DNA from: Schmidtea polychroa
Lineage: Eukaryota
Direction: 5' to 3'
NCBI GenBank assembly: GCA_044892525.1
Contig: CM097887.1
Span: 56,296,001 to 56,360,000, forward strand
DNA: 64,000 bases
Shown: piece by piece, positions 1,550 through 59,370 of the stretch
How the letters are laid out: each line of letters opens with the position of its first letter
Position numbering within the stretch: the first letter of the stretch is position 1
Program-made: the position numbers and the translations under genes
Notes under the pieces: generated by a model
Database searches by the model: none
Seen by the model: only the letters and a program-made list of their open reading frames with translations
What the model was told of the DNA's origin: nothing

Positions 1550-2714
1550 ACATANNNNNNNNNNNNNNNNNNNNNNNNNNNNNNNNNNNNNNNNNNNNNN
1601 NNNNNNNNNNNNNNNNNNNNNNNNNNNNNNNNNNNNNNNNNNNNNNNNNNNNNNNNNNNNNNNNNNNNNNNNNNNNNNNNNNNNNNNNNNNNNNNNNNNN
1701 NNNNNNNNNNNNNNNNNNNNNNNNNNNNNNNNNNNNNNNNNNNNNNNNNNNNNNNNNNNNNNNNNNNNNNNNNNNNNNNNNNNNNNNNNNNNNNNNNNNN
1801 NNNNNNNNNNNNNCCAACTTAGATAGAGTAATTCACAATTTTCATAAATAACCCTCTCAAGTTGTATACTAGTTGAACTAATAATAGTAGGGTTAATTTA
1901 GATTATATATACTACACTCGAAAATAAAAAATATTTTTAATTATATATTTAAATATATATTTGACTTATAAAGTTATAATTCAAATTTATTTCCTTTTCC
2001 CCTCAAGTTATATGATAGTCGAGGTAGGGCGACGATACCAATCGAACAGTACATCTTATTAATATTATTTATGCTATCATAGGTCTAATATCACTTTGTT
2101 ATTCCAAGTTCATGACTGGGATTATTGGTCTTCTTTTGCTCATTTACCATGGTCCTCATTATTACGAGTAATTGCTTCATTTTAGATGCCAATTTGAGGG
2201 TTATGGTGGAGATACACAGAGGTTCCAGATCGGTCGGGAAATATTAACATGGTAATGATGTTTCGCTGTTAATTCAATCTTGTATAACAATAATTATTCA
2301 GTTGTGGAATATAGATATTTTTTCCATTCATGAACATTTGAATTCTACCTTCCTCAATCTCTGCGATTTAATTCTAGAAATGTATCAAAATCACACAGGA
2401 AACATGAGCAATAATGTTAAGTGGATATTATGTGATGGATATCCTTCGACTGTTAGCAGCAGCCTGATGTTAATAAAAATATAGGCATAAAGGCAGCTAA
2501 TAATCAACTACAACAGAGAAATATTAGTCAAAGCTAAAGAGATTCGTTAGTATGATACGGGTTCCCATTTGAACACAGCTTTAAATAAAACTAATGTTGG
2601 TATATGTGGGGAAGAGGAAATTATTGCACGCATTATCATCTCACACACCCTGCATCATTACTCCGCTCAGATACTCCCCATACATACACAAAATGATCAT
2701 GTACATATTCCCAC

Positions 2715-2848
2715 GCATGAGCCCGTGGTGATGTTCCACGTTGGTGCTGCCCACACGGGTTGGAAAAGGTTAGCAGGTGAGCCTCTGCCTTAAGACTACT
2801 CCTAACCCTTTCTCGGTACGGGTTCTACGGTGCCTTAGAAGGTCTTAC
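2715..2848 (-). ncRNA. Conserved three-hairpin structured RNA, copy 1 (unnamed)
   Basis: H1 CCTTCT/AGAAAGG. H2 GGTTAG-GAGTAGTCTTAAGGCAGAGGCTC-ACCTG-CTAACC. H3 GTGTGGGC-AGCACCAA-CGTGG/CCACG-G-GCTCATGC. The stems covary with the copies at 40568-40705 and 59050-59186. Confidence 0.75.
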
Positions 2849-3134
2849 CCATTGCTTCACACGAAATCCAGTCTGACCCTGGTCCGAAGGGACGACATTT
2901 AAGTTCGTATCATATCTTCAGAAGTACCTTTCACTTAAATAAATCACAGCAATCCATGCATACTAGGGACAAAATCAAAGGATTTGAACAGTTATATTGA
3001 ACAACAAAACCCCAAAGAAATACATTTATCATTAAATAAATAAGCACAAAACATCAACGGGCGTATATAGGATAACGTCACTTCTTCGGGTTTCTTTATG
3101 CTGCACGAAAATATTTGGCCACTGGAAGGGGTCA

Positions 3135-3896
3135 TTACGGAAACCCCTCGCCTTCCGCGATCATCGCGTCGATGTCGACGGGAAATCGGTGGTCGGACAT
3201 ATACTTAATACCTTCTGCTGGAATTATGCGAATGATTTCCTTAGTTGGAATGGAATGGCTGGAGGATATTTCTTTTATGGTAGACTGAGCCACCGATAGG
3301 GACGTCTCGAGAGCAGCCATCGCGTCTCGGCGTTTCTGATTTTTCTCGGCTCGGGTCGGCCGTTTCCGTTTGCGGGACGACGGGTGGTTTTCAGTGTGCG
3401 GGGTGACGACGGGTGCCACCAGAATTGGATCCAAGATGGGGTCGGTAGGTCCACCTACCACAGGTTGAGAACCCGATAAAATTGGAGCTGGGATGGGCGG
3501 TAGGCACGATCCATGCCCTTGGCAGCTCGTAGTAGTTGGTTTGGATACTTGGTGATGAAGAGGGAAAACGTTCATTTTTTCTATGACGGGGAATTCCCGT
3601 ACCCGCTTGGCTAGCTCTGCCTCCGTGTATACCTTGTGGAGGGCTTCTGATTGGGCTTTGATTGTAAGCCGTTGGCATCGGCTTTCCTCCAGCAAGCTAT
3701 CTCTACAATGTTCTAGCCGCAATACTTTACTTCTCTCCTCCTTCATTTGTGGCGGGGAGAACCACGTGCCTTCGTAAAGATCGATTCTTTTCTTGAGAGC
3801 CCCGATGTAGAGGTGAAGCTGCGCGATGTCAGCATTTTTGTCCGCGCAGGAAAAACAAGGACGAAGAATTTTCTCGGTATTGATTGGGGTAGTCAT
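3135..3896 (-). CDS. Family X ORF A (253 aa): CxxC, coiled coil, basic patch; function unknown
   Basis: Intact ORF with an N-terminal ~90 aa clearly homologous to 41000-41749 (shared LRPCFSC, EGTWFSPxQMKE, EHCRD, QSEALHKVY). Confidence 0.75.
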   Translation of the reverse strand: MTTPINTEKILRPCFSCADKNADIAQLHLYIGALKKRIDLYEGTWFSPPQMKEERSKVLRLEHCRDSLLEESRCQRLTIKAQSEALHKVYTEAELAKRVREFPVIEKMNVFPLHHQVSKPTTTSCQGHGSCLPPIPAPILSGSQPVVGGPTDPILDPILVAPVVTPHTENHPSSRKRKRPTRAEKNQKRRDAMAALETSLSVAQSTIKEISSSHSIPTKEIIRIIPAEGIKYMSDHRFPVDIDAMIAEGEGFP

Positions 3897-24896: not shown

Positions 24897-27238
24897 GAGA
24901 ATATAATTACTAAAACTAGATATTAAAAATTTTATATATACTTAACTATAAATTTATACTAATTACATAAGTTTAATATATCTAAAATTAATGATTCAGA
25001 ATTTAAATTAAATAAAAATGACTTGTTCAAAATTTCATTACAAAACAAAGGTACATAAAAATATTTTTTTTAAAAAGTGCATTTTCAATTATTTAAAGTG
25101 ACGTGCAGAAACAATATAGTTGAATTTTTAATATGATTATTGCCCATTTTTGTTTCTTGCTTCTAAAGAATTTAANNNNNNNNNNNNNNNNNNNNNNNNN
25201 NNNNNNNNNNNNNNNNNNNNNNNNNNNNNNNNNNNNNNNNNNNNNNNNNNNNNNNNNNNNNNNNNNNNNNNNNNNNNNNNNNNNNNNNNNNNNNNNNNNN
25301 NNNAAGTAAAAACTAGGTGCAAAACGAATCTGAGCTTTTTAATATAGGTTATATTATCTTAAGTTGAACAATAAAACACAAAATAAAATAAGTGGACACA
25401 AAATTAGTAGAAAATTAAATTCATTTTTAAAAGAATGAAGTAAACATGAAATTGTATGCATTTATTAAGAAACAAAGTGAAAGAATTAAGTAGAATAAAT
25501 TATTAATATAGATTGAATTCAAAAATTTTAACAACTGATTAGCGAACCAGCCGAATCCAACCAATTTAACCCATTTAAAATGATGTTAAACATCAAAATG
25601 TAGAAATATTTTATATAATTCGGTAGGATATTTTTGTATTCTGTCAATATAATTCAGATGGATTTACTTGATATAAGAGCAGGAAACCCTATAGCAGATC
25701 GTCTCAAGTAAGTTGACTAAACGAATCTGGTATTACTCTAAAAATGTCTTTTTCTATCATTTTCTTTTCCACTTTAATCTTTGTTTCCTCACTCTTTTCA
25801 CTTAACTTATGGTATTTAACCAGAATAACAATTTTCTTGAGTCGAGAGCTCTGATCCTGTTAATTGAGCAGGATCTATCACGTCCTCGGCATCATTTGCC
25901 TCATCATTTACATAATTTTCCATTGACAAATATGAGAGAAAGTTTTTCTTGTTCGTTCCAGAATTATTATATGAATATCTCAAGAACTGAAAACATAATA
26001 ACAGTGACAAAATTTCTAAATGCGTTTGACGCTCACCGTTGTATTTATGCATGCAACAAGAACAACAATATTTGTTGTTATCACTAAGAATTAACTTTTT
26101 TCAACTCAATTAATTAATAACTTATCAGCAGGTGCTCTTACAGGTTCACGGACTGTCGATAGAAGGCCTGTGTCCAAATTTTATTTAGGTCCCTTTTCCA
26201 ATGATCCCTTGTACCTATGTTTCGGCTCGTATTATGATATCGCCGTTTAATCAACGAAAATTTAAAAATATCACTGCTTAATTTATGAAAATAACTGTCT
26301 AAATACATGAACGGATTTATTAAAAGGAAACCCAGGTTATTCACATTTGTCATTGCTTTTCCTTGGTTGCAACCAGTTTTCGGAGCATCTTAAGCCGTGC
26401 TCATTCAACTTTTCTATGGCGTTTCTTTTCTGGATCAAGGGTCGCAGTTTGAAAATATCGAGCATTTTGGTCGTCACTGGCCGAATTTGTTTAGTCAGTT
26501 CCCGATTGACAATCTTCAAATTTACCTGTGTCTCCATCTGTCAGACTTGTAGCCTGAGCGCTCTTGTGCTGCAGTTGTTGAATTAGCTTCAGACGCTTCT
26601 GCATTTCGATGGGACTAAACCAAGTGCTCTCTACCTCCCGGCACCGTCCTCTGAATTTAATGAGTCGACGTTGCAACTCCGTTACTTATTTCAAGGCGGT
26701 TTTCTTATGGGACTGCAAATTCTCCATTAATTGGATCATTGAAAAGGAAGACAAAACTTTAATTCGTAACGGTATACATCTATCTTGATTAATTCTAAAA
26801 TATAAGGCGTCATATTCCTGATAACTCATCTGTTCCTATTGTTCCCTATCACTGACGGCACCTTAGTCTGACTCTCTTTTCTATTATTATCCAAATCGAG
26901 CCCAACCGTAACGGAGTCCGAATGTTAATTGGCGCTCCGCATTGCCCTGTTTTATTAGGATTTCTGTGCCTGGCACCATCATACCTCAGTCATTCAATGC
27001 CTCACTCGTTCACATCCTTTCCATACACAGACATACACCTCAACATACATTATACACATCAAAGAACCAGAATCTACTACTAATGCTTTTATTAGACGAT
27101 AAAATTCATTATTATTAATAAATCTTTTACAAGAAAATAACTACATCCAATACAGTCACCACAAATATAATATCAGTAACTGAAATCATATCCGGTCTGT
27201 TGTTTTTGTGGGCACCCAGGCTTCTTGGGCGGCTCCTC

Positions 27239-40445: not shown

Positions 40446-40567
40446 CTGGGATATTGCCCGGTTGAATCCAACTATTTCGCTTTAGTCTAAGGGATGGGTG
40501 TCCATCCAGTTACGATAGAGATGACCGTGTCAACCCAGAGCAAAACCCCGCACAACCTACACTCCAA

Positions 40568-40705
40568 CATAGCACCCGTGAACCACTTCACGTTGGTAAT
40601 GTGCTATGCCGGCGAGACGCCAGTAAGCAGGTGAGCCCCTGCCTTAGGACTACTCCTTACTGAGGCCCCGACTTCCTTTCCCTGACGGCCGATGGAAGGA
40701 CTTAC
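40568..40705 (-). ncRNA. Conserved three-hairpin structured RNA, copy 2
   Basis: H1 CCTTCC/GGAAAGG. H2 CAGTAAG-GAGTAGTCCTAAGGCAGGGGCTC-ACCTG-CTTACTG. H3 CATAGCAC-ATTACCAA-CGTGAA/TTCACG-G-GTGCTATG. Confidence 0.75.
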
Positions 40706-40999
40706 GTCTGACCACATCCTCAAACCTCGGATTTCCTTGAATGGGATACAAATCGATCATTGCTTGTTGGACTTTGAAAACGTAACCCTATTCATAGAGT
40801 CTACACCGAGCTAATTGTCAGAATTACAATTAATAAAAGAAACAAGATTTTTAGTCAAAATGGATTTATTTTCACATCAATACAATACACAGAAAACTAT
40901 ATGCAGTATATACAATTTAATAGAAAACGGAGCACGAGATAGGTGGAGATATTCAGTTAGATAATTTTTATACAACAAGATTTTCCTACGGTGGGATTT

Positions 41000-41749
41000 T
41001 CATTTCTCCCATTCCGTGTCAGCTAGAAGTTCATCTAAATCGAAGAACTCGGAGGCGTTTTCCTCCCACGTTACACCGGCGGCGGAGATAATGCGCCCTG
41101 GGATCCCTACGGTTAGATCGACCACGGTGGGATTGCCGTTACGGTTGACTGGGGTGACGGTTGAGGGTGTGCTTTGTTTGACGACTGCCCGTTCTCGTTG
41201 TTTCCGTTTTCTTTCAGCCCGAGATAATTGTCGACGCTTGGGCTTAGAGGAGCTGTTAGTAGTAAGAGGCAGAGTAGAGGTGGAAGCGATGGATGGAATT
41301 GCTCTACTAGTGCCGGTAAAGATCAAGTCGGCTGGCTTGGGCGAGAGCTGAGTCTCTACACACCCTCGGCAAGACTTTTTAGGTGGAGGCGACGACTTTG
41401 AAGACGTGTCGTGGTGAGTTGGGAAGAGCTGGTCGGCTTCATTTATAGGGATCTTCACTATCTTCTTAGTGGTTGCTGCCTGTAAGTAAACTTTGTGCAG
41501 CGCCTCGGACTGCTCCTTTATCAGGCTTCTTTGGGCACGGCTTTCGGAGATCAAAGCGTCCCGACAATGTTCACTACGATAGAGCTTCTTCTGGGTCTCC
41601 TTCATCTGAGCGGGACTGAACCATGTCCCCTCTAGCTCGTCTATTTTCCTTTTGTATTTCCCAATTTGGGTCTGTAGGTCTTTGATTATTGCATTCTTGC
41701 CTGAACAAGAAAAGCAGGGTCTGAGAACGGTTTTTGAATTGGGTAACAT
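41000..41749 (-). CDS. Family X ORF A (249 aa)
   Basis: Intact homolog of 3135-3896. Both proteins end in a similar acidic-hydrophobic motif (FFDLDELLAD vs FPVDIDAMIAE). Confidence 0.75.
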   Translation of the reverse strand: MLPNSKTVLRPCFSCSGKNAIIKDLQTQIGKYKRKIDELEGTWFSPAQMKETQKKLYRSEHCRDALISESRAQRSLIKEQSEALHKVYLQAATTKKIVKIPINEADQLFPTHHDTSSKSSPPPKKSCRGCVETQLSPKPADLIFTGTSRAIPSIASTSTLPLTTNSSSKPKRRQLSRAERKRKQRERAVVKQSTPSTVTPVNRNGNPTVVDLTVGIPGRIISAAGVTWEENASEFFDLDELLADTEWEK

Positions 41750-44493: not shown

Positions 44494-44715
44494 CTTTAAA
44501 ATCAATTATTGTTATTCACAATTTGGGGGATAGGAATTGAGATCAGAGGGTTATAGTATTTTATATTGGGAAAATATATTTATAATAATAAAATCATCAT
44601 TGATCAATTTTAAATAAATAAATTCAGTTTTTTTTATTTATCAAGCAACTCAAAAGATAAAATAGATAATCAACCCGAAATAATTTATAATTTAAGGAAT
44701 AGAATAGTCTATAGG

Positions 44716-46512: not shown

Positions 46513-46721
46513 AAGAAAGTAAGGAAATTGATACACCAACCCCATCAGTAGAATTGAGTATAAACGACGAAAATGACTATGACAAACTATTTAGATTGTG
46601 GGATGCTTCTTCAGGAGGGGCAACGAAGTCACCAACAGCTAGCGATGAAATCTTTAAACCTATTGACACAAAATAGGATAATTTACATGAGACAATAGAA
46701 AAAATTGCGACACAAGCAAAT

Positions 46722-47369: not shown

Positions 47370-49230
47370 ATGTCAATAGTAATTATAGTAATAACGTTAT
47401 TGTTAGATCTGATAAAAGCAAATAATGCAATCATAGCGTATGACTGTTAGAATCCTAAGTGGGGACAGAAATATTCATTATTAGATGTAGAAAATTGCCC
47501 AGAGGCTAATCCAACAAAATTAATTGTTGCAGATCCAAAGATTTTTCACATATATCAAGAGTCTGACTTCATTCACACTGAAGCAGGAGAATGTATCGTT
47601 AAATATTCAGAGGAAAGTTTTGTGTGCAATAAAATAGCAAGAACAATATAAACTCCAACATGGGCACCAGAAGCGATAATAATAGCACCAATCGAATGTG
47701 AAAATGCATTTAAAACAAAAAAGATAAAAACGCCGGATGGATTTGAGTTAAATGCTCAGGTAGGAGCACGAGTAAGGCAATTAGTAAATGTCGTTGGATG
47801 GTCATCAACAGGAGGATATTGTGAAGGAGGAACGTATAAAATATGGGGGCATGTGGCAGACAATATTGTAGTGAGACGACAATATTATATTGAATTAAGG
47901 AAATTCAAGGCGTCATTTGATAGTTCATCAAAGAAAATGATGACACATAAGTTCTGCACATTAGATGAGACAAGCTGTGATACAGGCGAGTCAATGATCA
48001 TATACAAAGTAAACAAATACGAATGCCATCTAACTAAACTAAAGACACTGAAATTCAGAACGATACGAGGTAAACAGTTCACGGATGTAGAATCCAAGAA
48101 CATTAAAGACCAAAAACGACGTGCAACGATAATTCAAGAGAGATACACCAACGATATACATGTCAGATTCTGAAACTGAAGCGATGAGATTTGTGGGAAA
48201 AGGTGAAAGTATTAAATGTGGAAAAGCAGTCATACAAACAAATTATGAAGGAATTTATATCAGTGGAAGTAAAATTAAAGAGGCAAAATCGAAAATAGAC
48301 AAATTCGATGACAAGCTAGCGTCATATTTTAATAATAAAATCGACTATTTTTATCATCATCAGTTAGTACAATTGGACAAAGTATACCAAGCAACTATTG
48401 CGAACGATTGTAAACTCAATAGAGAAATATTAAGAACAAAGATGGCGGTTGCAGTCACAAACCCAGATTTAATGGCACCAATTTTATTTGCAGAGAAAGG
48501 GACATTTGCAAGAGTTGTCGCTGAAGTGATACAAACATTTCAGTGTAAAGCGGTTAGTGTATCTTTAGCAACGAATAATAAATGTACAAACGAAAAACCA
48601 GTAGTGTATAAAGGAGAAACTGTATATCTCCAACCAATAACAAGGATATTAACAGATAAAGACTATGTTCCGAGAAAAATTGATAAATGTACAAATCTAT
48701 TAGATCCGTTATACAAAATAAATGATGATATGTGGATTACAATGTCAGATAGAAAGGAAGGGACTAAACCACAAAAACTAGAATTAACTGAACTTGAGAA
48801 AAAGTTAGAATTTCAGGAAGTCAACGAAATGGATAACAATGGGATGTATACGAGAGAGGCGATAGAGAGCGCCAGAAAACATATGTTATTTCCTCATGAA
48901 AAAGAAAAAGTTCTTTCTATTATGGTAAACAAAATTATCGAGAATAGTTATGGAGGGAATTCCAACTTTGATGTATTATTATCAAAAGAGCACTTCAAGA
49001 AAGTTGTGTATAGAGTATTATACAGCATATGGGGATATTTTGCGATTCTCGGAAATACGTTTGCCACTATATTGGGTATATATTATACAGTAGCACTATT
49101 GAAAATGATTTGTTCATCATTAGTTTTGTTAAGACAACTGAGACAAGTTTTTGGTAATTCATATAAAATGATGGCATGTTTATGTCCATTCATAGCCAAA
49201 TATTTGATCACTGCGAAGCACGACAAAGAA
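47370..49230 (+). pseudogene. env: Envelope glycoprotein, class III (herpes gB / chuvirus G-like); two in-frame stops and one frameshift
   Basis: Signal peptide MSIVIIVITLLLDLIKANNA followed by IIAYDC, then GGYCEGGTY, DCKLNREIL, FQCKAV...CTNEKPVVYKGETVYLQPITRIL...C and a C-terminal TM hairpin. Stops at 47448 and 47649; frameshift at about 48140. Confidence 0.75.
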
Positions 49231-49479
49231 ATCAAACGGATGAAAAGTCGAAGGGAAGAGGGTGAAATAATGATCACCAATGAGAAAGATGACGAGGCAA
49301 ACAAATCAGAAAATATTGAGCAACCACATATTGGGTTATATGATAATCAAAGAGAACAATTGACAGAATTGAGAAATAATATTGAAATTAGAATCCCAAG
49401 TGAAAATGGTAATTGTCATTGTGTTCCAAGGAAAACTTATGGATGTTACGGGTTAGAACTTGACGATATATTAGAAGGG

Positions 49480-52400
49480 TTAAATGAAGCAAGGCCTAAA
49501 TTACAAATAGTGATAAATAATAAGATAATAAAGGCATTATGTGACACAGGAGCAGCAGCTTCTATGATTCGTGAAGATCAGTTAACCGAAAATCAAAAGA
49601 AAAATATCGTGAGCACAAGAGATAGAGTAATTTTATTATCATCACATAACATACCATTAAAAGGCGATATCGAATTAACAGTCCACTTTTCAGATCAAGT
49701 GGTTGAACATGTCTTCGAGGTAGTAGCAGAATGTAAATGCGGGTGTGTCCTTGAGATGGACATACTCAAAAAGTTAAAAAACTGTGTAATCGATCTAACG
49801 GATAGTACAGTTAAACGGAAAGCAATATATCAAGACGCAAGATTTACTGAGGTAATTGCATTAGAGACATTCGAACTAGATTATCAAAGTGATCATATAA
49901 TTCCAGTAAAAGTTAATGTTAAAAGTGAGGACACTTTCATTTTCGAGCCTGAAACGGCAATATCACGAAATCATAATGTAATGTTAACAGACGAGTGTGT
50001 AGTTCCAAATAATGGGATAATTCCAATAAGAATCGCGAATTACGAAAGGAATAAAGTAAAAATTCATAAAGGTACAAAATTGGGAAAGTTGTTCAAAGGT
50101 GAATTAGAGCAAACATTTGAAGTATGTGAGATGTCGATAACGAGTGATGTCGGTGAAGGAATGGTCGAACAGAGTAGAGCGAATAATATTAAATTTTATG
50201 ATAAAATTAAAATAAATAATAATTATCTAAACGAAACACAACAACTACAACTACAAATATTACTTGACGAATATAGTGATGTTTTTGCAAGACACGAATT
50301 TGATTTAGGAGATACTGATATTATTAAACATGTAATCGATACGGGGAATGCTAGACCAATAAAACAGAGACCCTATAGTGTACCATATAAAATGAGGGAG
50401 GAAATTAAACGACAAATTAAAGAATTAAAAGAGGCAGGCGTAATAAAACAAAGTTTTTCACAATGGGCATCACCTATTGTGCCAGTTAGAAAGAAAGACG
50501 GGGAAATTCGAATGTGCATTGATTATCGTAAATTAAATGATGTAACAGTAAAAGATTCTTACCCATTCCCGAGAGCACAAGAACAATATGATAAACTTAG
50601 GGATACTAAGTATTTCACAGTAATAGATGCAAATAAAGGTTACATGCAAATTCAAATGGAAGAGGGGGATGCGGAAAAAACTGCTTTTGTAATTGAGGAT
50701 GGTTTATATGAATATACAAGACTACCGTTTGGGTTAACTAATGCGCCAGCAACATTTCAACGTTTAATGAATACAGTATTAGTAGATGTACAGCATTGCG
50801 CAGTATATATGGATGACATATTAAAATCGTCAAAAACATTCGAGGAACACTTAAAAGACATAGCAAATGTATTACAAAGATTGAGAAAAGCGAGAATTAA
50901 AATAAAACCCACTAAATGTAAATGGGCAGAACCTTCAGCATTATTTTTAAGACATATAGTCACAGTAGATGGTATAATACCTAACCCCGATAAAATTGAA
51001 GTAGTTAAAAAATTTCCAGTTCCAAAAACATTACAACAAGTACAGGGGTTTTTAGGTCTCACAGGATATTATCGTAAATTCATACAAGATTATGCAAAAA
51101 TAGCAGCACCACTAATTGAATTAACAAAAGGAGTCAAAACAAAGGGAGAGAGTAAGAGAGTGTTAATAGTACAGGAGATTAACGATAAAATTAACAAGCC
51201 ACAAAAGAAATGGAAAGATGAACATCAAAAAGCTTTTGATCAACTAGAAGAAAAATTAATAACAGCACCGATACTAAGATACCCAGACTTTAAAAAACAG
51301 TTTATTGTCATGACAGACGCCAGCCGGAAGGCTGTAGGGGCAGTCTTAGGACAAGAAGAGGAAAAGGGTAAAGATTATGTAATAGCTTATGCAAGCAAAA
51401 CATTAAAAGGAGCACAGATTAGGTACTCAACAATCGAGAAAGAATGTTATGCTATAGTTTTTGCATTAAAACAATTTAAACCATACATATATGGAACTGA
51501 AGGAGTAATTAGAACAGACCATAAACCATTAGAAGGGTTATGGAAACATAAAGATACATCCAGCAGACTGTTAAAATGGGCAATGAAAATACAAGACATG
51601 CACGTAAAGATTGTATACAAACCAGGCAGAATAAACAGGAATGCAGATGCATTATCACGAATTCCAGAGTTGGGAGCACTAGAAGTTTTTGCATTAGTAA
51701 CTGAAAAACCAATAGAAATATATGAGGAACAAATGAAAGACCCAGAACTCTTCAAAATAAGAGAGGAAATAAAAAAGGGAACTAACCAAAAGTATAAAAT
51801 CTGTAAGAAGTTAATTGTTATTGAGGATTTTAGCGGTAAACAATTAATAGTAGTACCACAAAGATTAAGACAAATTCTTCTAATACAGTATCACGATGGT
51901 GCTCTAGGAGGTCATTTATCAAGTAGGAAAACAGCAAGCAGATTGATGCAAAAATATTACTGGGACGATTTGAAAAAGGATGTTAAGAGATGGTGTAATG
52001 CATGCACAATATGCGCAACTAGAAAAAATACAGGAACAAAGACTAAAGCACCTTTACATCCAATCCCAGCTACAACATCACCAATGGAACTGTGCGCAAT
52101 GGATTTTTTGTGTAAACTACCCACAACAATTAATGGGAATAAGCACATACTAGTTTTTAGCGATTATTTTACCAAATGGGCAGATGCATTTCCCACTAAA
52201 GATGAAACAGCAGAAACAGTAGCCAAATTACTTGTAGAAAAAATAATCTTTAAAATCGGTACACCGAGGAAATTATTAACAGATAAAGGGAAAAACTTCA
52301 TGAGTGAAACTATAAAAAGAGTAGCTAACATATTTAACATGCATAAAATCAACACAACAGCATACCACCCTCAAACTGATGGTTTAGTGGAAAGATTCAA

Positions 52401-52956
52401 TGGGACATTTCTAAGTAGATTAGCCGTGTTTGTGGGAAAAAACCAAAATGATTGGGATGAATACGTTAATCAATGCACATATATTCATAATATCACACCA
52501 AATGAGACAACGGGATATTCACCATATTTTTTAATGTTCTTAAGAGAGCCTGCGACACCGATTGATACAATTTTTGAGCCTCGAGTATCACAATATTTAG
52601 ATGCACCAGATTATGTAACATTAATGCAAGAGAGATTTCAAGAGGTATATAAGATCTCAAATTTAAAAGTTAAATTTAGACAAGAACAGTATAAGGCAGA
52701 TTACGATAAAAATAGCAAACCTCATAATTTTAAAGTGGGAGATAAGGTTAGACTTATGTCTCCACAAGTAGGTAAAGGCAAAACAACTAAATTAGCAAGA
52801 CCATTTAAAGGACCATACGAGATAGTAAAAGTAGTACATGAAAACCTGCATTTACAAAAACATAAAAATGAGGATTCGATAATAGTACATGCTAATAGAT
52901 GCAAATTAGCAGAAACAGAGTTAGTAGAAAAACCACCTCACAAATATGGATTATGA
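49480..52956 (+). CDS. pol: Pol (PR, dUTPase-like linker, RT, RNase H, integrase), in frame with the env C-terminus in ORF 48160-52956
   Basis: ALCDTGA; RMCIDYRKLN, PFGLTNAP and YMDD (50806-50817); TDAS/EKE/TDH/ADALSR; HHCC and D-D35-E (MDF, TDKG, GLVERFN). Confidence 0.95.
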   Translation, partial: LNEARPKLQIVINNKIIKALCDTGAAASMIREDQLTENQKKNIVSTRDRVILLSSHNIPLKGDIELTVHFSDQVVEHVFEVVAECKCGCVLEMDILKKLKNCVIDLTDSTVKRKAIYQDARFTEVIALETFELDYQSDHIIPVKVNVKSEDTFIFEPETAISRNHNVMLTDECVVPNNGIIPIRIANYERNKVKIHKGTKLGKLFKGELEQTFEVCEMSITSDVGEGMVEQSRANNIKFYDKIKINNNYLNETQQLQLQILLDEYSDVFARHEFDLGDTDIIKHVIDTGNARPIKQRPYSVPYKMREEIKRQIKELKEAGVIKQSFSQWASPIVPVRKKDGEIRMCIDYRKLNDVTVKDSYPFPRAQEQYDKLRDTKYFTVIDANKGYMQIQMEEGDAEKTAFVIEDGLYEYTRLPFGLTNAPATFQRLMNTVLVDVQHCAVYMDDILKSSKTFEEHLKDIANVLQRLRKARIKIKPTKCKWAEPSALFLRHIVTVDGIIPNPDKIEVVKKFPVPKTLQQVQGFLGLTGYYRKFIQDYAKIAAPLIELTKGVKTKGESKRVLIVQEINDKINKPQKKWKDEHQKAFDQLEEKLITAPILRYPDFKKQFIVMTDASRKAVGAVLGQEEEKGKDYVIAYASKTLKGAQIRYSTIEKECYAIVFALKQFKPYIYGTEGVIRTDHKPLEGLWKHKDTSSRLLKWAMKIQDMHVKIVYKPGRINRNADALSRIPELGALEVFALVTEKPIEIYEEQMKDPELFKIREEIKKGTNQKYKICKKLIVIEDFSGKQLIVVPQRLRQILLIQYHDGALGGHLSSRKTASRLMQKYYWDDLKKDVKRWCNACTICATRKNTGTKTKAPLHPIPATTSPMELCAMDFLCKLPTTINGNKHILVFSDYFTKWADAFPTKDETAETVAKLLVEKIIFKIGTPRKLLTDKGKNFMSETIKRVANIFNMHKINTTAYHPQTDGLVERFNGTFLSRLAVFVGKNQNDWDEYVNQCTYIHNITPNETTGYSPYFLMFLREPATPIDTIFEPRVSQYLDAPDYVTLMQERFQEVYKISNLKVKFRQEQYKADYDKNSKPHNFKVGDKVRLMSPQVGKGKTTKLARPFKGPYEIVKVVHENLHLQKHKNEDSIIVHANRCKLAETELVEKPPHKYGL

Positions 52957-52971
52957 TCACAAAAAGCACTG

Positions 52972-53802
52972 ATGATGGCAGCGACATTTTTAACAATTAT
53001 AGGGTTGTGTAGATCAACTGAAGTAGAAAATGAGAACATACACTCAGTAGAATACATGGCTGAAGATATTTTAATCAACGTTTCACCGGATAAGATTAAA
53101 GCATATAACTTAAATAAATCACCAATAAGAGACTTGTATCTGGAAACTAGGGACAATATACCCAAACTTATGAAAAAAATTGAAAATAGATCAACTAATG
53201 AATTTGAAAGAGGAGATAATGTTGAATTCAGAGATCTACAACCCAACACTAATTACACACTTTGTGCACAATGGAACACATTAGTTGACACATCACAGAT
53301 AAGGTGCAAAAGGATAAAAACTACTAAAATAAACAGACTTAGAATAAAAAAACCAATAGGGAAAAAGATATCAACAACCAGAAAAACAACTACTGTAGAT
53401 TCAATATCCACACATCCTATATCACAAACAATAACGAATATATATAGGAAAACGACATTTAAAACGGTTAGACAAATATATAAAAAATTAATAATGAAAA
53501 ATCCAAGACAGTCTGATAAGAAACTGATAAAATTACCTACAGGAAAACCGATAGTTATAAATAACTGGAATGAATTACAAGTCTTTCAAAAGAAAGAAAG
53601 TAAACCACAATGGCCTTTTTATGTAATAGCTACAAGTGTAGTATCATTCGCGATTTTAGCAATTGTCACTAGTGTACAAGTTTATAAAAAGTACAAGAGG
53701 AAAAGGCAGCAGTATCGGCACCGACTGGTCAAAGAAGCACCAGGGCATTTTCACTTAGACAAATATATCCCTGGACAATATACTCTGTCCACACTTGTAT
53801 AA
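52972..53802 (+). CDS. Type I membrane protein with an FN3-like segment, in the same frame as pol
   Basis: Signal-like MMAATFLTIIGLCRS, FN3-like VEFRDLQPNTNYTLCAQ, a Thr/Lys-rich stalk, TM WPFYVIATSVVSFAILAIVTSVQVY, then KKYKRKR. Confidence 0.6.
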   Translation: MMAATFLTIIGLCRSTEVENENIHSVEYMAEDILINVSPDKIKAYNLNKSPIRDLYLETRDNIPKLMKKIENRSTNEFERGDNVEFRDLQPNTNYTLCAQWNTLVDTSQIRCKRIKTTKINRLRIKKPIGKKISTTRKTTTVDSISTHPISQTITNIYRKTTFKTVRQIYKKLIMKNPRQSDKKLIKLPTGKPIVINNWNELQVFQKKESKPQWPFYVIATSVVSFAILAIVTSVQVYKKYKRKRQQYRHRLVKEAPGHFHLDKYIPGQYTLSTLV

Positions 53803-54082
53803 TAACTTAAAAAATTTTAATTACGTAAATTGGTCAATGATATATAATAAAAGTATATATATTAATATTTATATAACTGCGTATAAGGTTAAACCTCAAA
53901 TGCGCAACAAGCATAAATATTTATTGTTTGTTTTTAGAATAATAATAAGAAACCTAGTCAGTCAATCGAATCAACCTAATCAAATCGATCTTCCAATAAA
54001 CCAAAGTCAATTCAGTCAATCGAATCAACCCAATAAAAACAATCATCATTCCTACCAAATCAATCTTCAAACAAACAAATCA

Positions 54083-54791
54083 ATGCACCCACATACGTCA
54101 GTTTACATGTATTCTCAAAGAACCAAAGCCCAGCGCAATCCAGAAACTCACAAAATAAAGAAATACGTACCGATGATACATAAACACTACAATAGTTTTT
54201 ATAAAAATCTACAAAATAAGATCAGCACAGACGGCACTCCCATTACTATCAGAAGCTTCCCTAACCAAGTCTGCATTCCAAATGACATGAAAATTGAAAT
54301 CGAAGAAAGGGAACTCCATCTCATCAAATTTAATGAAGCCCGAAGAGTAAAACTCAAAGACCTCATTGGAACATTTGATCAGTTTCCAAATGCAGAAGAA
54401 GCAGTAAGGGAAGGAAAAAAGGTACCACACAGATTACTGTTTCACATCACCAAGACAGAAGTATCAATCTGTCAAGATAGGACACCTTTAATTACCACCA
54501 GCAATTGCACAATAATGTTTAAAACAGTCAAAAACGATCGGAGCGTACCAAATGAATACAATCAACTAATAGTGCAGATGAATAACCTACCATGCGTAAT
54601 CGCAATCGAAATATTGTACATTCCTACCATCCCAAATCCTTTCAGAGAATTAGAAATCATCAAATATACAATTCAAATCCCAAGAGATGCAATTAACAGG
54701 AGAATATCATTCACCCATCAAGACCTATCAATAACAGAACGACATCAGCGTCTCATGTTCGTGGAGGCAAGGCTGATAATGGATATTAACA
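54083..54791 (+). CDS. Element-borne ORF of unknown function; runs into a gap
   Basis: Open frame of more than 230 codons with element-like codon usage. No motif recognised. The track start at 53795 crosses low-complexity AT-rich sequence. Confidence 0.5.
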
Positions 54792-55151
54792 NNNNNNNNN
54801 NNNNNNNNNNNNNNNNNNNNNNNNNNNNNNNNNNNNNNNNNNNNNNNNNNNNNNNNNNNNNNNNNNNNNNNNNNNNNNNNNNNNNNNNNNNNNNNNNNNN
54901 NNNNNNNNNNNNNNNNNNNNNNNNNNNNNNNNNNNNNNNNNNNNNNNNNNNNNNNNNNNNNNNNNNNNNNNNNNNNNNNNNNNNNNNNNNNNNNNNNNNN
55001 NNNNNNNNNNNNNNNNNNNNNNNNNNNNNNNNNNNNNNNNNNNNNNNNNNNNNNNNNNNNNNNNNNNNNNNNNNNNNNNNNNNNNNNNNNNNNNNNNNNN
55101 NNNNNNNNNNNNNNNNNNNNNNNNNNNNNNNNNNNNNNNNNNNNNNNNNTA

Positions 55152-55580
55152 GTATACGACAAGAAAATCACACCTTGGACAAAAGTACTGCACTATTACC
55201 CTGAAAAAACGGAATCCAATAAAGAAAATATCATTGGTAATGAGGACGAATATCATGCACTCATCGAGATTCAAAAATTATTATGCGGGAAAATAATAGT
55301 GGGATATGAAATCATAGATAAATTAAAAGCCCTAACCTTGTATCTAGACAATGTGATGGGGGTAAAAGAAATGGCAAATGATGCATTCTTGACATCATTT
55401 GTAAAGAACGTAGCTCCTCACAAAATCAAGCTGTCAAACCTGGCCTACCAAGTTATCAAACACCACAAAAGGTGGTACAAAGACAAGGCGATAAACGCAA
55501 ATATTGAAAAGACCTGAACCCATCTCGGCGAGACACACAACAGCGATCCTGAAAGTCATCTATGACATAGTCGAAACACA
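55152..55580 (+). pseudogene. REXO4/ISG20-like DEDDh exonuclease domain, catalytically degenerate
   Basis: VYDKKITPWTKVLHY...IQKLLCGKIIVGYEIIDKLKAL...KLSNLAYQVI, then after a frame change IYDIVETQWE. This parallels REXO4 VYDKYVKP...AEMLKGRILVGHALHNDLKVL...SLRLLSEKIL...LYVMVKKEWE as I recall it. Confidence 0.6.
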
Positions 55581-56334
55581 GTGGGAAGAAGTAGTAAAAT
55601 GGAATGTAGCATCAGAATACCCACTGTCAGGAAGTACAGCAGCAGAAAATCCACAATCAACAGAGACAAGAGAAGATGATCTGTTCATGGAAGAGGAGGA
55701 CATGTATATCGAACCCTCGCAATTCGAGCTAAAATATCGCAGAGATGGAACTCGAAGAACTTTCGAAAATGAGTTAGAAGATAGCGACGATGACCTCATA
55801 TTCATCTCAGAAGAAAGGAGACAGGAACCTGTGCAAACAGTTAAACTCGAACCACGGGAACCACAAAGTCAATCAATGATAACAGAATGCGATTTAGACT
55901 CAGACGAACAGTACTTCTCACTAGAAGAACAAAACAGTGGAGAAGAAGAAGATGCAATGAGTGTCGATGAATCGGAAGAAGAACTGGGGCCTGAACCAGA
56001 TATAAACATAGAGGAGCCTCATTTTATAATAGAAAAAGAAAAGCAACAGATCACAGAAAAGGAATTGACTCGTCATTTCGGGAGACGAATAAACGAGGGC
56101 GATATCCTAAACATAGCATTGGGCAAAGGGTTCAACCGAACAAAAATGCTCATCCAGGATTGCGAGATAGAAATAGTAAAAAGTATTAGAGATAATGCGG
56201 ACATTATCTTAACGGCCCAGGGAGGAATGTTGGATGATGAAGGTAGGCACATCACCACATTCAATCTCAACAAGTATTATAGGACTGGGCCCAGAAAATA
56301 TAGAGTCAATGTGTGCGCTGAAGAGCGTAGGTAA
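55504..56334 (+). CDS. Acidic ORF with an unknown C-terminal domain, ending inside the 3' LTR
   Basis: 276-aa track ORF with D/E-rich tracts. It crosses the PPT and terminates 107 nt into the LTR. Confidence 0.55.
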   Translation: MKRPEPISARHTTAILKVIYDIVETQWEEVVKWNVASEYPLSGSTAAENPQSTETREDDLFMEEEDMYIEPSQFELKYRRDGTRRTFENELEDSDDDLIFISEERRQEPVQTVKLEPREPQSQSMITECDLDSDEQYFSLEEQNSGEEEDAMSVDESEEELGPEPDINIEEPHFIIEKEKQQITEKELTRHFGRRINEGDILNIALGKGFNRTKMLIQDCEIEIVKSIRDNADIILTAQGGMLDDEGRHITTFNLNKYYRTGPRKYRVNVCAEERR

Positions 56335-57456
56335 ATCAAATAGCTCAGCAGTCCAATTTCCCAACAATCCAATGCCTCAAACAATAGTAACAACCAACAA
56401 TTCAATTCCTCAATTCAATTCCTCAAATGATAACAATAACTTTTGTGTGATAAATCGTATCAAACTTTATTAACATTGATCTGTGTTTTAACTATATTCA
56501 TTTTTATTCGTGTATAAATTTTTAGTGTATTTTACTTTATTGACATTATCAACACTCTGTGCTTTTAACTTTATTTATTTTTATTCATATTTGTATGTAA
56601 AATTTTGATTATATTTGATTGTAAATTTTATTGGTAAACACAAAAAATAAATATATATATATAANNNNNNNNNNNNNNNNNNNNNNNNNNNNNNNNNNNN
56701 NNNNNNNNNNNNNNNNNNNNNNNNNNNNNNNNNNNNNNNNNNNNNNNNNNNNNNNNNNNNNNNNNNNNNNNNNNNNNNNNNNNNNNNNNNNNNNNNNNNN
56801 NNNNNNNNNNNNNNNNNNNNNNNNNNNNNNNNNNNNNNNNNNNNNNNNNNNNNNNNTGGTAATAGTGGTGATAATAGTAATGGTAATAATAATGATAATT
56901 TAAGAAAGTATTAATTAATTAATATAAGTAATTAAAAATATTTGAAATTTAATGTCAGTCTGACGAGACTGAAAGAATCTAAAAGAATCTAAAAATGAAA
57001 TTTAATTCAATATCAGTCTGACGAGACTGAATTAAATAACGTATGAAATTTAAAATAATTAATTTATGCAAAAATAATCTACTATATAAACGACTCACAA
57101 AGTCAGTGTAGTGGCCCAAAATTTTAGCGAAAAACTCTTATTCAAAGGTTAATCCTTAGAATAACTCAATACCCGAATCAGAACAAAAAGATTCACATCT
57201 TGACTAAACATACTAAGGTACAGCACGCACTACACAACATAAAACAATACACATATATTTTTACAAGCATTTCAGAAGAAGAATTTGAGAAATAATTGTC
57301 AAAGCATTGCAAAGTCTTATAGACTTGAAATTGCTTATATTTGGTAATTTTTGATTATAATAAATCTTTATACACATATTTGTTTTGTTTTGATATATAT
57401 ATATATATATATAGGAACCAGTAAGTTGAGTGTTCCCGAATATCGAGACCTCAACA
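56228..57456 (+). repeat. 3' LTR of the large Gypsy element
   Basis: TGTTGGA start directly after the PPT and ...CTCAACA end. TATATAAA at 57083, TCAGT at 57103 and AATAAA at about 57359. Confidence 0.85.
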
Positions 57457-57749: not shown

Positions 57750-59250
57750 TGTTGGGCTGAAACAGAGAACTGAGAGTTTGTTTTAATCGATCGAAAATAC
57801 CTAACACAAAAACCGCAAAGTTGAAAAAATTTATGATCAAGGTTTAATATAAAATAAGTCACATCACACATTAAGAATCAATAAACCCCTTATAATAGAA
57901 TAAAGAGATAAATAAATTTAACAGAAAAATTCAACACTTAAAAAATTTTCGATAGAAAAATAATAAAATGTAAAATAGAATTATTTGAAAATTATTTAAA
58001 CGATATAAAAATTAAATCGTCTAAATAATAAAATTAGTTAGCATTAGGTAAATTGTATAATTTATAGAATTAAATGGTTAGAATTATGTAACTTATTAAA
58101 TTTAAAGAATAAAAGTGTTTAAATTAATAGAAATTAAAATAACTCGAATTATTTAAATTATAAAATTTATAAAATTAAATTATTACAATTAATAAAAAAT
58201 TAAATAATTAATTAATGTATGCAAAATTAATTCAAAATTTCTCGCACTCTGATTGGATAGAGTGGCAGAGAATGCATGAAGGCGCATTCAAAATCAGTAT
58301 AAATACTGATTACAAATTGTTTGAAAAAACTTTTTTTCAACATCACAACTTAATTTGCAGACAGTAAAGCTCTCAGTTTTCGATTTTATGCCAACGTGGA
58401 TTTGGTAATTTATTTTTTATTGTTATTGTAATTTTTACGAAATGATTTAATTTAATAAATTTTACATGCAATTAATTTTTTAGTTAAATTTTCTTTTGTT
58501 GCCCTTTTTAATTGTTTAATTTCATTTAGTTTTAAGTTTTAAATAATAATTTTTATTCGGTTCAACTTTTGCGTTAATTAATTTTGAATAATAGTTATAG
58601 TGGAACTGGAATCCAGTAGGCCACAGCATTAAGGGACACTAGTTGTTCCTATTTGCGAGTAGGTCGGCTGGCTTTTCAGATTCACACGGATTGATCAGAC
58701 CATAACGAGGAGGCTTCTCCCCTGGTCCGTCTCTGTAAATATTTTCTAGTCGGAAATAGGTTAGGACTAAGAATACAGGCAGATCCCTGCTCAAATTTTT
58801 TGATGGACAATTTAAGTATTATGACAAGTGTGGATTAACTTGGAAATAAGGGCCGATCCATGCTCAAATTTTTTGCGAGATAGGTTAAATATTCATAAAT
58901 ATCAAGAAAAATACCTAGCAACCTTTATTAATAGAAAAATAAGGGCGCATCCCTGCACAAAATTTTGAAAGGAAACAATAGAAAACATCTAGAAATGAGG
59001 ACCATAGCCGAATGAGATAGAAAAGTAGAAATAGGAAATGATCGATGACGTAAGACCTTCTATCGGCCGTCTAGAACCCGAAGAGAAAATACAATGGGGA
59101 GTAGTTTTAGCAATAGAGCTCACCTGTTCATTGTTTTTTCGCCTTTGTGTACAGTACCAACATGGTCGTCACCATGGGTACACAAACGGTTTAAAGTACA
59201 ATAGTCATGGAGGTGCGTAGGAAAGAGTCGAGTAAATACCTATGATTACC
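57750..59250 (+). mobile_element. Family X copy 3: short, apparently non-coding derivative
   Basis: TGTTGGGCTGAAAC start, A-rich tract, CTGATTGG (~58251), TATAAATA, unit end CGATTTTATGCCAACG (58396), and the hairpin module at 59050-59186. No ORF A. Confidence 0.6.
59050..59186 (+). ncRNA. Conserved three-hairpin structured RNA, copy 3
   Basis: GTAAGACCTTCTA leader. H2 CAATGGG-GAGTAGT...AGCTC-ACCTG-TTCATTG. H3 TTTGTGTAC-AGTACCAA-CATGG/CCATG-G-GTACACAAA. Confidence 0.75.
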
Positions 59251-59370
59251 CCTAACGTATTTAAAATTTAAAATGACACACCCCTAAGTAACCAACAAAA
59301 TGGAGAGCTTCTTTGGTTAAGACGAAAAGTCACCGAATAAATTATTAATTATGTTCGCGAGATGTCACCG

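What the first reader, a model, noticed from the sequence alone, without database searches (positions are those of the whole stretch)
59050..59186. Unnamed three-hairpin RNA conserved by covariation in three dispersed copies (also 2715-2848 and 40568-40705)
Seen: the lower stems of H2 and H3 differ almost completely in sequence between copies yet always pair (GGTTAG/CTAACC, CAGTAAG/CTTACTG, CAATGGG/TTCATTG; GTGTGGGC/GCTCATGC, CATAGCAC/GTGCTATG, TTTGTGTAC/GTACACAAA). The unpaired parts are conserved: GAGTAGT, a 5-nt ACCTG bulge, an 8-nt AxxACCAA bulge opposite a single G, and a GTAAG(A/T)CCTTC leader. G-U pairs form only on the ORF A sense strand, which indicates an RNA-level function. It does not fit the hammerhead, twister, pistol or HDV cores as I recall them. 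Inferred: a cis-acting replication, packaging or priming signal (H3 has the stem-bulge-stem topology of hepadnaviral epsilon) or a new ribozyme class.
Basis: partly seen in the sequence, partly recalled or inferred. Interest (0 to 1): 0.88.

Follow-up and report, generated by a model that had tools for sequence, protein, structure and literature searches.

The report
Conserved three-hairpin RNA after unknown ORF
A 147-base RNA fold of three hairpins, kept by compensating base changes in three very diverged copies, lies about 285 bases behind an undescribed coiled-coil, arginine-rich gene of a dispersed repeat family in an AT-rich animal genome. It matches no catalogued RNA family and is most likely a protein-docking signal on that gene's transcript.

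Summary
Three copies (59045-59191 +, 40562-40710 -, 2709-2853 -) share one fold: a short H1 and two long hairpins, H2 and H3. 97.7% of pair cells are paired and 21 of 44 pairs show compensatory changes; register-shifted controls give 1-5. There are 17 G.U cells against 2 A.C cells, and the consensus energy is -51.5 versus -35.0 kcal/mol, so the folded strand is the ORF A sense strand. Nothing outside the module aligns between copies, and third codon positions of the neighbouring ORF are saturated, so the conservation reflects selection. A covariance model finds only these three copies plus one decayed remnant (26103-26177 -).

Rfam 15 gives no match. In two copies the module lies 281-289 nt behind an intact ~250-aa ORF (38% identical); a third, broken ORF copy precedes the remnant. 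The ORF has no Pfam family. It is predicted as a helical hairpin, a disordered linker and a basic helix. Its only relatives are chimeric gene models from one poorly sampled lineage, which suggests a repeat family.

Best reading: a cis-acting protein-recognition element of this ORF-plus-RNA unit. The function is inferred, not shown. The ribozyme and epsilon-like readings are neither supported nor excluded. It is a new RNA family of a known general kind.

The parts
59045..59191 (+). Module copy E3. H1 59047-71, linker 59072-84, H2 59085-59140, H3 59142-89. No ORF A upstream.
   Evidence: CM 157.4 bits. Helix bounds. hmmsearch finds no ORF A remnant nearby.
40562..40710 (-). Module copy E2. H1 40684-40708, linker 40670-83, H2 40614-69, H3 40564-40612.
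   Evidence: CM 143.6 bits. Helix bounds.
2709..2853 (-). Module copy E1. H1 2828-51, linker 2816-27, H2 2761-2815, H3 2711-59.
   Evidence: CM 137.8 bits. Helix bounds.
26103..26177 (-). Decayed module remnant E4. H1 is still recognisable with a different but still pairing stem. One internal deletion, and the 3' part is lost.
   Evidence: Sequence read, alignment. CM gives only 6.8 bits, E 3.5. It lies behind the ORF A remnant on the same strand.
41000..41749 (-). ORF A, copy E2, intact, 249 aa. Predicted helical hairpin (residues 13-40 and 46-98), disordered middle, basic helix 177-191.
   Evidence: No Pfam family. GC3 0.54.
3135..3896 (-). ORF A, copy E1, intact, 253 aa, 38% identical to E2.
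   Evidence: Codon-position identity 0.61/0.71/0.34 over the first 100 codons.
26494..26685 (-). ORF A remnant E4, broken. About 40 N-terminal codons are still recognisable, it is cut by at least one stop, and the rest can no longer be aligned.
   Evidence: hmmsearch E 1.8e-5. tblastn E 3.8e-4.
2854..3134 (-). Spacer between the ORF A stop and the module, E1. 281 nt, AT-rich, no sequence conservation.
40711..40999 (-). Spacer between the ORF A stop and the module, E2. 289 nt, AT-rich, no sequence conservation. Contains AATAAA and ATTAAA strings.

Best explanation
The module is a functional, strand-specific RNA structure that belongs to a two-part genetic unit: ORF A, then about 285 nt of unconserved spacer, then the module. 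The unit is a dispersed, repeat-like (transposon- or virus-derived) family in an AT-rich animal genome.

The RNA most likely acts in cis on the unit's own transcript as a docking site for a protein. The variable, compensating stems hold invariant internal loops and bulges in a fixed geometry. These are the H2 G/AG/U...CAC/CU/G loop region and the H3 8-nt bulge opposite a single G.

The prime candidate binder is the arginine-rich basic helix of ORF A itself. ORF A's N-terminal helical hairpin could multimerise on the RNA, giving a ribonucleoprotein used for export, stabilisation or packaging of the unit's RNA.

Shown: the fold, its covariation, the strand, and the linkage to ORF A.
Inferred: that ORF and module share one transcript, that a protein binds the module, and that this protein is ORF A.
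For: Fold and covariation:
- 97.7% of cells paired and 21/44 compensatory pairs, against 1-5 in slid controls.
- 17 compensatory pairs on a structure-blind alignment.

Strand:
- 17 G.U versus 2 A.C cells.
- -51.5 versus -35.0 kcal/mol.

Selection:
- Flanks and spacer do not align.
- ORF A third codon positions are only 30-34% identical, which is saturation. Positions 1 and 2 are 61% and 71% identical.
- The module has stops in every frame in two of the three copies, so its conservation is not protein coding.

Linkage:
- The module lies on the same strand, 281 and 289 nt behind the stop of ORF A in E1 and E2.
- A decayed ORF A plus decayed module sit in the same order in E4.

ORF A:
- Confident helical hairpin (pLDDT >90) and a basic helix.
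- Relatives carry long arginine runs; one of them also has a weak Pfam REV match (E 0.0013, below cut-off).
- Relatives occur only as chimeric gene models fused to at least 10 unrelated host domains, and none is fused to a reverse transcriptase. This is the signature of a dispersed repeat that is not the first ORF of a LINE.

Conservation pattern:
- Conservation is concentrated in invariant internal loops and bulges, while most stem pairs vary with compensating changes. This is the reverse of a microRNA precursor and is typical of protein-binding RNA sites.
Against: - There are only three full copies, all from one window. No relatives' DNA could be reached.
- Copy E3 keeps a perfect module without any ORF A, so the RNA can persist alone.
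- No consistent polyadenylation signal follows the module. In E2, AATAAA and ATTAAA strings lie between ORF and module, so a shared transcript is unproven.
- The basic region could be only a nuclear localisation signal.
- Unit ends, target-site duplications and terminal repeats were not found, so mobility itself is inferred.
Confidence: 0.5

Rival explanations
1. The module is a 3'-end recognition structure for a reverse transcriptase supplied in trans. This is how R2 and the 'stringent' LINEs recognise a 3' UTR fold. The ORF A unit would then be a non-autonomous retroelement, and copy E3 a 5'-truncated copy.
For: - E3 keeps only the 3' module, as 5' truncation would produce.
- Conservation stops sharply right after H3.
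- RT-bearing elements are present in the window.
Against: - No poly(A) or microsatellite tail and no target-site duplication follows any copy.
- No RT-bearing element in the window carries a similar 3' end; the CM finds nothing else.
- None of about 20 ORF A relatives is fused to an RT.
- Rfam's R2 element model does not match.
Confidence: 0.15
2. The fold regulates use of a 5' splice site. An invariant GUAAG sits in the 5' strand and internal loop of H1, so the module would be the start of an intron, or a U1-binding site, in the unit's transcript.
For: - GTAAG(A/T) is invariant in the three full copies and partly sequestered in H1.
- H1 covaries in copy E1, and the E4 remnant keeps a pairing H1 stem with different bases.
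Against: - No conserved acceptor or downstream exon.
- The decayed copy has lost GTAAG.
- Five fixed bases are weak evidence.
- H2 and H3 would remain unexplained.
Confidence: 0.1
3. The module is a self-cleaving ribozyme of a new class. Two helices with invariant internal loops would dock on each other, processing the unit's RNA just behind the ORF.
For: - Invariant nucleotides sit in loops and junctions between covarying helices.
- An ORF followed by a structured element on the same strand resembles the layout of delta-type agents (from general knowledge).
Against: - No Rfam ribozyme model matches at E<=10.
- No pseudoknot or tertiary pairing with convincing covariation was found. The best is a 4-bp H1-loop/linker pairing that is sterically doubtful.
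- The unit is not rod-like: MFE z-scores are +0.35 and -0.7 for 1.5 kb.
- This evidence weighs against the reading but does not exclude it.
Confidence: 0.07
4. The module is a stand-alone small RNA gene family (snRNA-, snoRNA- or spliced-leader-like) that merely lies near ORF A.
For: - Size of about 147 nt, three hairpins, GU after a short 5' segment, sharp boundaries.
- E3 stands without an ORF.
Against: - No Rfam hit.
- The sequence upstream of GUAAG is not conserved, so there is no leader exon.
- The U-rich stretch between H2 and H3 covaries as a stem rather than being a fixed single-stranded site.
- The order and distance to ORF A are conserved in E1 and E2, and the order in E4.
Confidence: 0.06
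5. The conserved block is really the 5' leader (packaging hairpins plus major splice donor) of LTR retroelements, read on the other strand. In E2 it lies 118 nt inside a 5' LTR. The complement of the invariant H2 3' strand reads as a 5' splice-site string.
For: - Position of E2 next to the LTR at 39280-40443.
- E4 lies 1.25 kb upstream of, and antisense to, a degraded gag-pol.
- A CAGGTGAGC string is present on the complement of all copies.
Against: - 17 G.U pairs become A.C mismatches on that strand, and the fold loses 16 kcal/mol.
- E1 has no LTR, gag or pol nearby.
- ORF A GC3 is 0.54 against 0.24-0.28 for the LTR element's genes, so ORF A does not look like a native gene of that element.
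Confidence: 0.05
6. The module is an epsilon-like protein-priming signal. The H3 bulge would template a short primer that is moved to a matching acceptor.
For: - H3 has a stem / 8-nt bulge / stem / loop topology with an invariant bulge core.
- ACCAAC recurs 143 and 135 nt downstream in E1 and E3.
Against: - The unit has no polymerase or terminal-protein gene.
- The module lies behind the ORF, not in a terminal redundancy.
- The Rfam epsilon models do not match.
- E2 lacks the downstream repeat, and the surrounding sequence is not significantly similar (p 0.07-0.68).
Confidence: 0.02

Closest known systems
Rev/RRE, Rex/RxRE and Rec/RcRE pairs of complex retroviruses (arginine-rich protein plus structured response element)
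   Same: - A small protein with a helical-hairpin N-terminal part and an arginine-rich helix.
- A multi-hairpin RNA with invariant internal loops in covarying stems, encoded in the same unit.
- One relative gives a weak Pfam REV match over its arginine run.
   Different: - No sequence or fold homology was detected.
- The element is about 147 nt, not 250-350 nt.
- It lies on the strand opposite to the gag-pol of the only LTR element that contains it.
- A nuclear export signal was not tested.
- This is a resemblance in how it may work, not membership.
R2 3' UTR element and the 3' stem-loops of 'stringent' LINEs and their SINE partners
   Same: - Secondary structure conserved with little sequence identity.
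- Located behind the coding region.
- Conservation ends abruptly at the 3' side.
- One copy consists of the 3' part only.
   Different: - No RT in the unit.
- No tail or target-site duplication.
- No Rfam R2 match.
- No partner element with the same fold in the window.
Hepadnaviral epsilon
   Same: Stem-bulge-stem-loop topology of H3 with an invariant bulge.
   Different: - The bulge is 8 nt opposite a single G.
- No polymerase gene and no terminal redundancy.
- Located 3' of an ORF.
- The Rfam epsilon models are silent.
- H1 and H2 have no counterpart.
Delta-type agents (coiled-coil, arginine-rich antigen ORF followed on the same strand by a self-cleaving RNA)
   Same: - The ORF architecture: N-terminal coiled-coil or helical hairpin plus basic RNA-binding region.
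- A structured RNA a short way behind the ORF on the same strand.
   Different: - No rod-like self-complementarity.
- No HDV-type or hammerhead ribozyme match.
- No homology of ORF A to any solved or viral predicted structure.
- The copies are DNA copies in a genome.
Constitutive transport elements of simple retroviruses and IAP-type elements
   Same: - Cis-acting 3' RNA of about 150 nt.
- Conserved internal loops in an extended stem bind a host export factor.
   Different: - No internal two-fold repeat of the loop sequence.
- Three separate hairpins rather than one long one.
- Not testable by sequence here.

Membership tests
Any Rfam 15 family (including hammerhead, twister, twister-sister, pistol, hatchet, HDV-like, hairpin and VS ribozymes, R2 element, SECIS, SL RNAs, snRNAs) | Score at or above the family's gathering threshold | tested here: not met
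   0 matches in the whole window. At E<=10 around each copy there are only scattered snoRNA, miRNA or frameshift-model hits of 14-20 bits, different for each copy.
Hepadnaviral epsilon | Match to the curated epsilon covariance models | tested here: not met
   No hit at E<=10.
Hepadnaviral epsilon | A reverse transcriptase with terminal-protein domain encoded by the same element | tested here: not met
   Only ORF A is conserved between units. No Pfam domain in neighbouring ORFs of E1 or E2.
Hepadnaviral epsilon | Bulge sequence repeated at an acceptor site | tested here: inconclusive
   ACCAAC recurs 143 and 135 nt downstream in E1 and E3 but not in E2. The flanks are not significantly similar.
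Delta-type (kolmiovirid-like) agents | Rod-like, highly self-complementary unit | tested here: not met
   1.5-kb units fold no better than shuffles, z +0.35 and -0.7. No long inverted repeats.
Delta-type (kolmiovirid-like) agents | HDV-like or hammerhead ribozyme next to the antigen ORF | tested here: not met
   No Rfam ribozyme hit.
Rev/RRE-type regulator pairs | Arginine-rich RNA-binding helix in a small element-encoded protein | tested here: met
   Basic helix 177-191 in the model. Arginine runs in relatives.
Rev/RRE-type regulator pairs | Homology to Rev, Rex or Rec proteins | tested here: not met
   No Pfam hit for the window's ORF A. One relative scores 19.1 bits against REV, below the cut-off of 22. 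No PDB or viral-fold match.
Rev/RRE-type regulator pairs | Protein binds the RNA element and drives export of unspliced RNA | not testable with these tools
   Needs binding or structural data.
LINE/R2-type 3' recognition element | Lies at the extreme 3' end, followed by a tail and target-site duplication, and shared with an RT-encoding partner | tested here: not met
   No tail or duplication. No other CM hit in the window. No RT fusion among relatives.
Spliced-leader RNA | Conserved leader exon 5' of the GU, and a fixed single-stranded Sm-type site between hairpins | tested here: not met
   The sequence upstream of GUAAG is not conserved. The U-rich stretch covaries as a stem.
microRNA precursor | Conserved stem arms, variable loop | tested here: not met
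   The opposite pattern is seen: stems vary, loops and bulges are invariant.

The most novel reading that the evidence does not exclude
ORF A and the module form a previously unknown protein-RNA pair of an invertebrate virus-like or mobile unit. One version is an arginine-rich, multimerising protein that recognises its own three-hairpin response or packaging element, a Rev/RRE-like or minimal Gag/psi-like system outside the retroviruses. The other is that the module is a new class of self-cleaving RNA sitting behind a delta-antigen-like ORF.
Probability: 0.2. Interest if true: 0.8.

Novelty: new variant of a known kind. Interest (0 to 1): 0.5.

Why it matters
This is a cleanly delimited RNA fold. 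It has very strong covariation for only three sequences, an unambiguous strand and no catalogued family. It is tied to a protein family that is itself undescribed.

If the pair proves to be a self-recognising protein-RNA system, it would extend the Rev/RRE or Gag/psi logic to a new, compact unit in invertebrates. It would also give a small, tractable model of arginine-rich-motif recognition.

If the module proves catalytic, it would be a new ribozyme class.

At minimum it is a candidate new Rfam family and a marker for annotating this repeat family in a poorly sampled animal lineage.

Tried and rejected
1. Known RNA families. Rfam was run at gathering score on the window and at E<=10 around each copy. 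Nothing consistent was found.

2. More copies from elsewhere.
- The H2-apex pattern gave 0 hits in IMG/VR and 17 in metagenomes. All were chance-level and matched only the seeded 28-37 nt.
- The H3 pattern gave 66 IMG/VR loci, again only seeded partial matches.
- Four ORF A sequences (the window's copy E2 and three relatives) were looked up by exact sequence and none is on record with DNA.

3. ORF A identity. Pfam, PHROGs, PDB sequence search, an AlphaFold model and Foldseek against PDB and viral structures gave only generic helical hairpins.

4. Unit ends. No LTRs, TIRs or convincing target-site duplications were found. The shared 10-12-mers are at chance level.

5. Long-range pairing of the invariant loops with the rest of the unit: none.

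6. Pseudoknots: only one doubtful 4-bp candidate.

7. Rod-like folding: rejected.

8. Coding explanation for the module: rejected.

9. ORF A as a native antisense gene of the 18-kb LTR element: made unlikely by codon composition, but not excluded.

10. Host identification. The one host-gene search returned a single unnamed 75%-identical protein.

11. Literature searches for a described equivalent found nothing relevant.

Full report
OBSERVATION

Copy E3 is on the + strand. Copies E1 and E2 are on the - strand.

A structure-blind MAFFT alignment folded with RNAalifold gives three elements:
- a short H1: 4 + 3 bp around a 7-nt loop, with the invariant GUAAG in its 5' strand and internal loop;
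- a long H2: about 21 bp in three segments;
- H3: an 11-bp lower stem, an 8-nt 5' bulge opposite a single G, a 5-bp upper stem and a 6-7-nt loop.

That fold has 44 pairs, and 17 of them show compensatory double changes.

A covariance model built from the three copies scores them 138-157 bits. It scores nothing else in 64 kb above 12 bits with filters off.

On the model alignment, 97.7% of pair cells are standard pairs and 21 of 44 pairs carry changes on both sides. 0 of 500 shuffles reach any of the five measures. Sliding the 3' partners by 1-3 columns gives 40-46% pairing and 1-5 compensatory pairs. An alignment fitted to the model leans towards the structure, but the blind alignment already gave 17 compensatory pairs.

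STRAND AND SELECTION

Of the paired cells, 17 are G.U and only 2 are A.C, the combination that would become G.U on the other strand. The consensus fold is -51.5 kcal/mol on the ORF A sense strand and -35.0 on the complement. The folded molecule is therefore the ORF A-sense strand, almost certainly as RNA.

Between copies, nothing outside the module and the neighbouring ORF aligns. This holds at DNA level with 7-nt words, in six-frame comparison, and in direct alignments of the spacer and of 400 nt downstream. Local alignment scores of the downstream flanks are at shuffle level.

Third codon positions of the ORF are 30-34% identical, which is saturation. Positions 1 and 2 are 61% and 71% identical over the first 100 codons. 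Neutral sequence has therefore been randomised between these copies, and both the fold and the ORF have been kept by selection.

The module has stop codons in every frame on both strands in E1 and E2, so coding does not explain it.

CONTEXT

In E1 and E2 an intact ORF of 253 and 249 aa lies on the module's strand. The two ORFs are 38% identical (E 4e-50). Each ends 281 or 289 nt before the module. The spacer is AT-rich and unalignable, yet almost the same length in both.

A profile of the ORF finds a third, broken copy at 26494-26685 (-). About 320 nt behind it on the same strand lies a decayed module remnant. The remnant retains H1 with a different but still pairing stem, and part of the H2 3' strand.

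Copy E3 has no recognisable ORF A.

ORF A has no Pfam, PHROG or PDB relative. A search of 1.84 billion representatives found 15 relatives, and a word-indexed profile search added three new ones among its seven hits. All are single UniParc entries in which the ORF A domain is fused to unrelated host domains. These include an SNF transporter, subtilase, CRAL-TRIO, GDC-P, L21, actin, PTP, ankyrin, MCM and a hAT transposase. These are typical automatic gene models that have swallowed a dispersed repeat. None is fused to a reverse transcriptase.

The family shares a GTW.SPE turn and an ESR.QR..I..QS helix. Most relatives also carry an arginine run, and two carry a PPPY motif.

The AlphaFold model predicts the following:
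- a confident helical hairpin, residues 13-40 and 46-98, pLDDT >90;
- a disordered Pro/Ser/Thr-rich middle;
- a basic helix, residues 177-191;
- a disordered acidic-hydrophobic tail.

Foldseek finds only generic helical hairpins.

RELATION TO THE LTR ELEMENT

E2 (module plus ORF A) lies inside an 18-kb LTR element. The direct repeats are at 39280-40443 and 56226-57386, with a purine tract before the 3' repeat. The element carries the following:
- gag with a zinc knuckle;
- a Bcl-2-like ORF;
- a class III fusion glycoprotein domain (Pfam Monjiviricetes_fusion, 2.8e-66) in the same reading frame as PR-RT-RNaseH-IN;
- three further ORFs.

E2 is on the opposite strand, and its module ends 118 nt from the 5' repeat. 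E4 likewise lies antisense, 1.25 kb upstream of a degraded gag-pol. E1 has no LTR, gag or pol nearby.

ORF A has GC 0.50-0.51 and GC3 0.54. The LTR element's gag, Bcl-2-like, env-pol and first downstream ORF have GC3 0.24-0.28 (its last ORF 0.39), and the host exons have GC3 0.23-0.24. ORF A therefore does not look like a long-resident native gene of that element.

I read E2 as a separate unit lodged in the element's leader. An integral antisense gene is not excluded.

The spacer is as AT-rich as the host. The GC excess is thus confined to the ORF and the fold.

WHAT IT IS NOT

- Rfam 15 gives nothing at gathering score. At E<=10 it gives nothing consistent across the copies.
- It is not a microRNA-type hairpin, because stems vary and loops are fixed.
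- It is not a spliced-leader RNA. There is no conserved leader, and the U-rich stretch covaries as a stem.
- It is not rod-like: 1.5-kb units fold no better than shuffles.
- It has no RT partner.
- No long-range complement of the invariant loops exists in the units.
- Only one sterically doubtful 4-bp pseudoknot candidate appears.

MECHANISM

The anatomy consists of variable, compensating stems that present invariant asymmetric loops and bulges. This is what protein-binding RNA sites look like. The nearest plausible binder is the arginine-rich helix of the co-inherited ORF A, whose helical hairpin could multimerise.

I therefore favour a cis-acting docking element for export, stabilisation or packaging of the unit's RNA. 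My confidence by level:
- about 0.95 that the fold is real and selected;
- about 0.9 for the strand;
- about 0.8 for the linkage to ORF A;
- about 0.3 that ORF A itself is the binder.

Rivals, in order of weight:
- an RT-recognition 3' element (E3 as a 5'-truncated copy);
- a splice-site-regulating fold around GUAAG;
- a new ribozyme;
- a separate small RNA gene;
- an LTR-element leader read on the other strand;
- an epsilon-like priming signal.

LIMITS

- There are three sequences from one window, and no access to relatives' DNA.
- Pattern scans of IMG/VR and metagenomes returned only seeded, chance-level partial matches.
- The host is unidentified. Its nearest TMEM126-like protein is 75% identical and unnamed.
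- One paper reports the GAG-ENV-POL order with a class III envelope for Nematoda, Bryozoa and Platyhelminthes (PMC13524379). This is only a hint at the lineage.
Noticed in passing
window 39280-57386: An 18-kb LTR retroelement with direct repeats at 39280-40443 and 56226-57386 and GAG-ENV-POL order. It carries a zinc-knuckle gag (44716-46272). A class III fusion glycoprotein domain (Pfam Monjiviricetes_fusion, 2.8e-66) sits in one 1598-aa ORF with PR-RT-RNaseH-IN (48160-52956). Three more unannotated ORFs follow (52972-56334), the last running into the 3' repeat. PMC13524379 reports this layout for Nematoda, Bryozoa and Platyhelminthes.
   Followed up: partly
window 46722-47450 (+): A 242-aa ORF inside that LTR element, between gag and env-pol, matches Pfam Bcl-2 (E 9.5e-7, 29.7 bits, just under the 31.4 cut-off). 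A PDB sequence search finds nothing. A retroelement-borne apoptosis-regulator homologue would be unusual.
   Followed up: partly
window 3135-3896 and 41000-41749 versus other ORFs: ORF A has GC3 0.54 in both saturated-diverged copies. Host exons and most ORFs of the LTR element have GC3 0.23-0.28. The spacer between ORF A and the module is host-like AT-rich. Either synonymous sites are constrained or the unit has a foreign (viral or horizontally acquired) history.
   Followed up: partly
window 2601-2607 and 59291-59296: The H3 bulge core ACCAAC recurs 143 nt (E1) and 135 nt (E3) downstream of the bulge on the same strand. Both are preceded by a CCCC run about 6 nt upstream. It is absent in E2, where the LTR begins 118 nt after the module. 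The surrounding similarity is not significant.
   Followed up: yes
module copies, both strands: Two invariant stretches read as 5' splice-site strings. One is GTAAG(A/T) at H1 on the ORF A strand. The other is the complement of the H2 3' strand (CAGGTGAGC) on the opposite strand, which in E2 is the gag-pol sense strand just inside the 5' LTR.
   Followed up: partly
window 27936-31239 (+): A degraded Ty3/gypsy-type gag-pol (integrase zinc-binding domain, E 9.5e-12; 24-34% identical to the large element's pol). It is broken by at least seven interruptions; stops and frameshifts were not told apart. No LTRs are detectable.
   Followed up: partly
window 58772-58986: Three loosely tandem copies of a 49-nt unit (63-78% identical, spacing 73-93 nt) lie directly upstream of module copy E3. 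They are absent from the other copies.
   Followed up: no
window 39717-39950 and 56665-56856: Both LTR copies carry an N run at the same relative position. The part before it is 100% identical between the repeats and the part after it is 92% identical. This suggests masking, assembly collapse or gene conversion.
   Followed up: no
window 8689-12596 (-), 24321-24896 (-), 19311-19793 (+), 10064-10504 (+), 15442-16092 (+), 21-1102 (+): Host-like exons: PRPP synthetase, a TMEM126-like protein, a TALE homeobox. They are interspersed with an RT fragment that apparently lies between two PRPP-synthetase exons, a DDE_1 transposase fragment, and transposase-like ORFs without a Pfam match. A further repeat family lies at 9020-9841, 36645-37459 and 20746-21014.
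   Followed up: no
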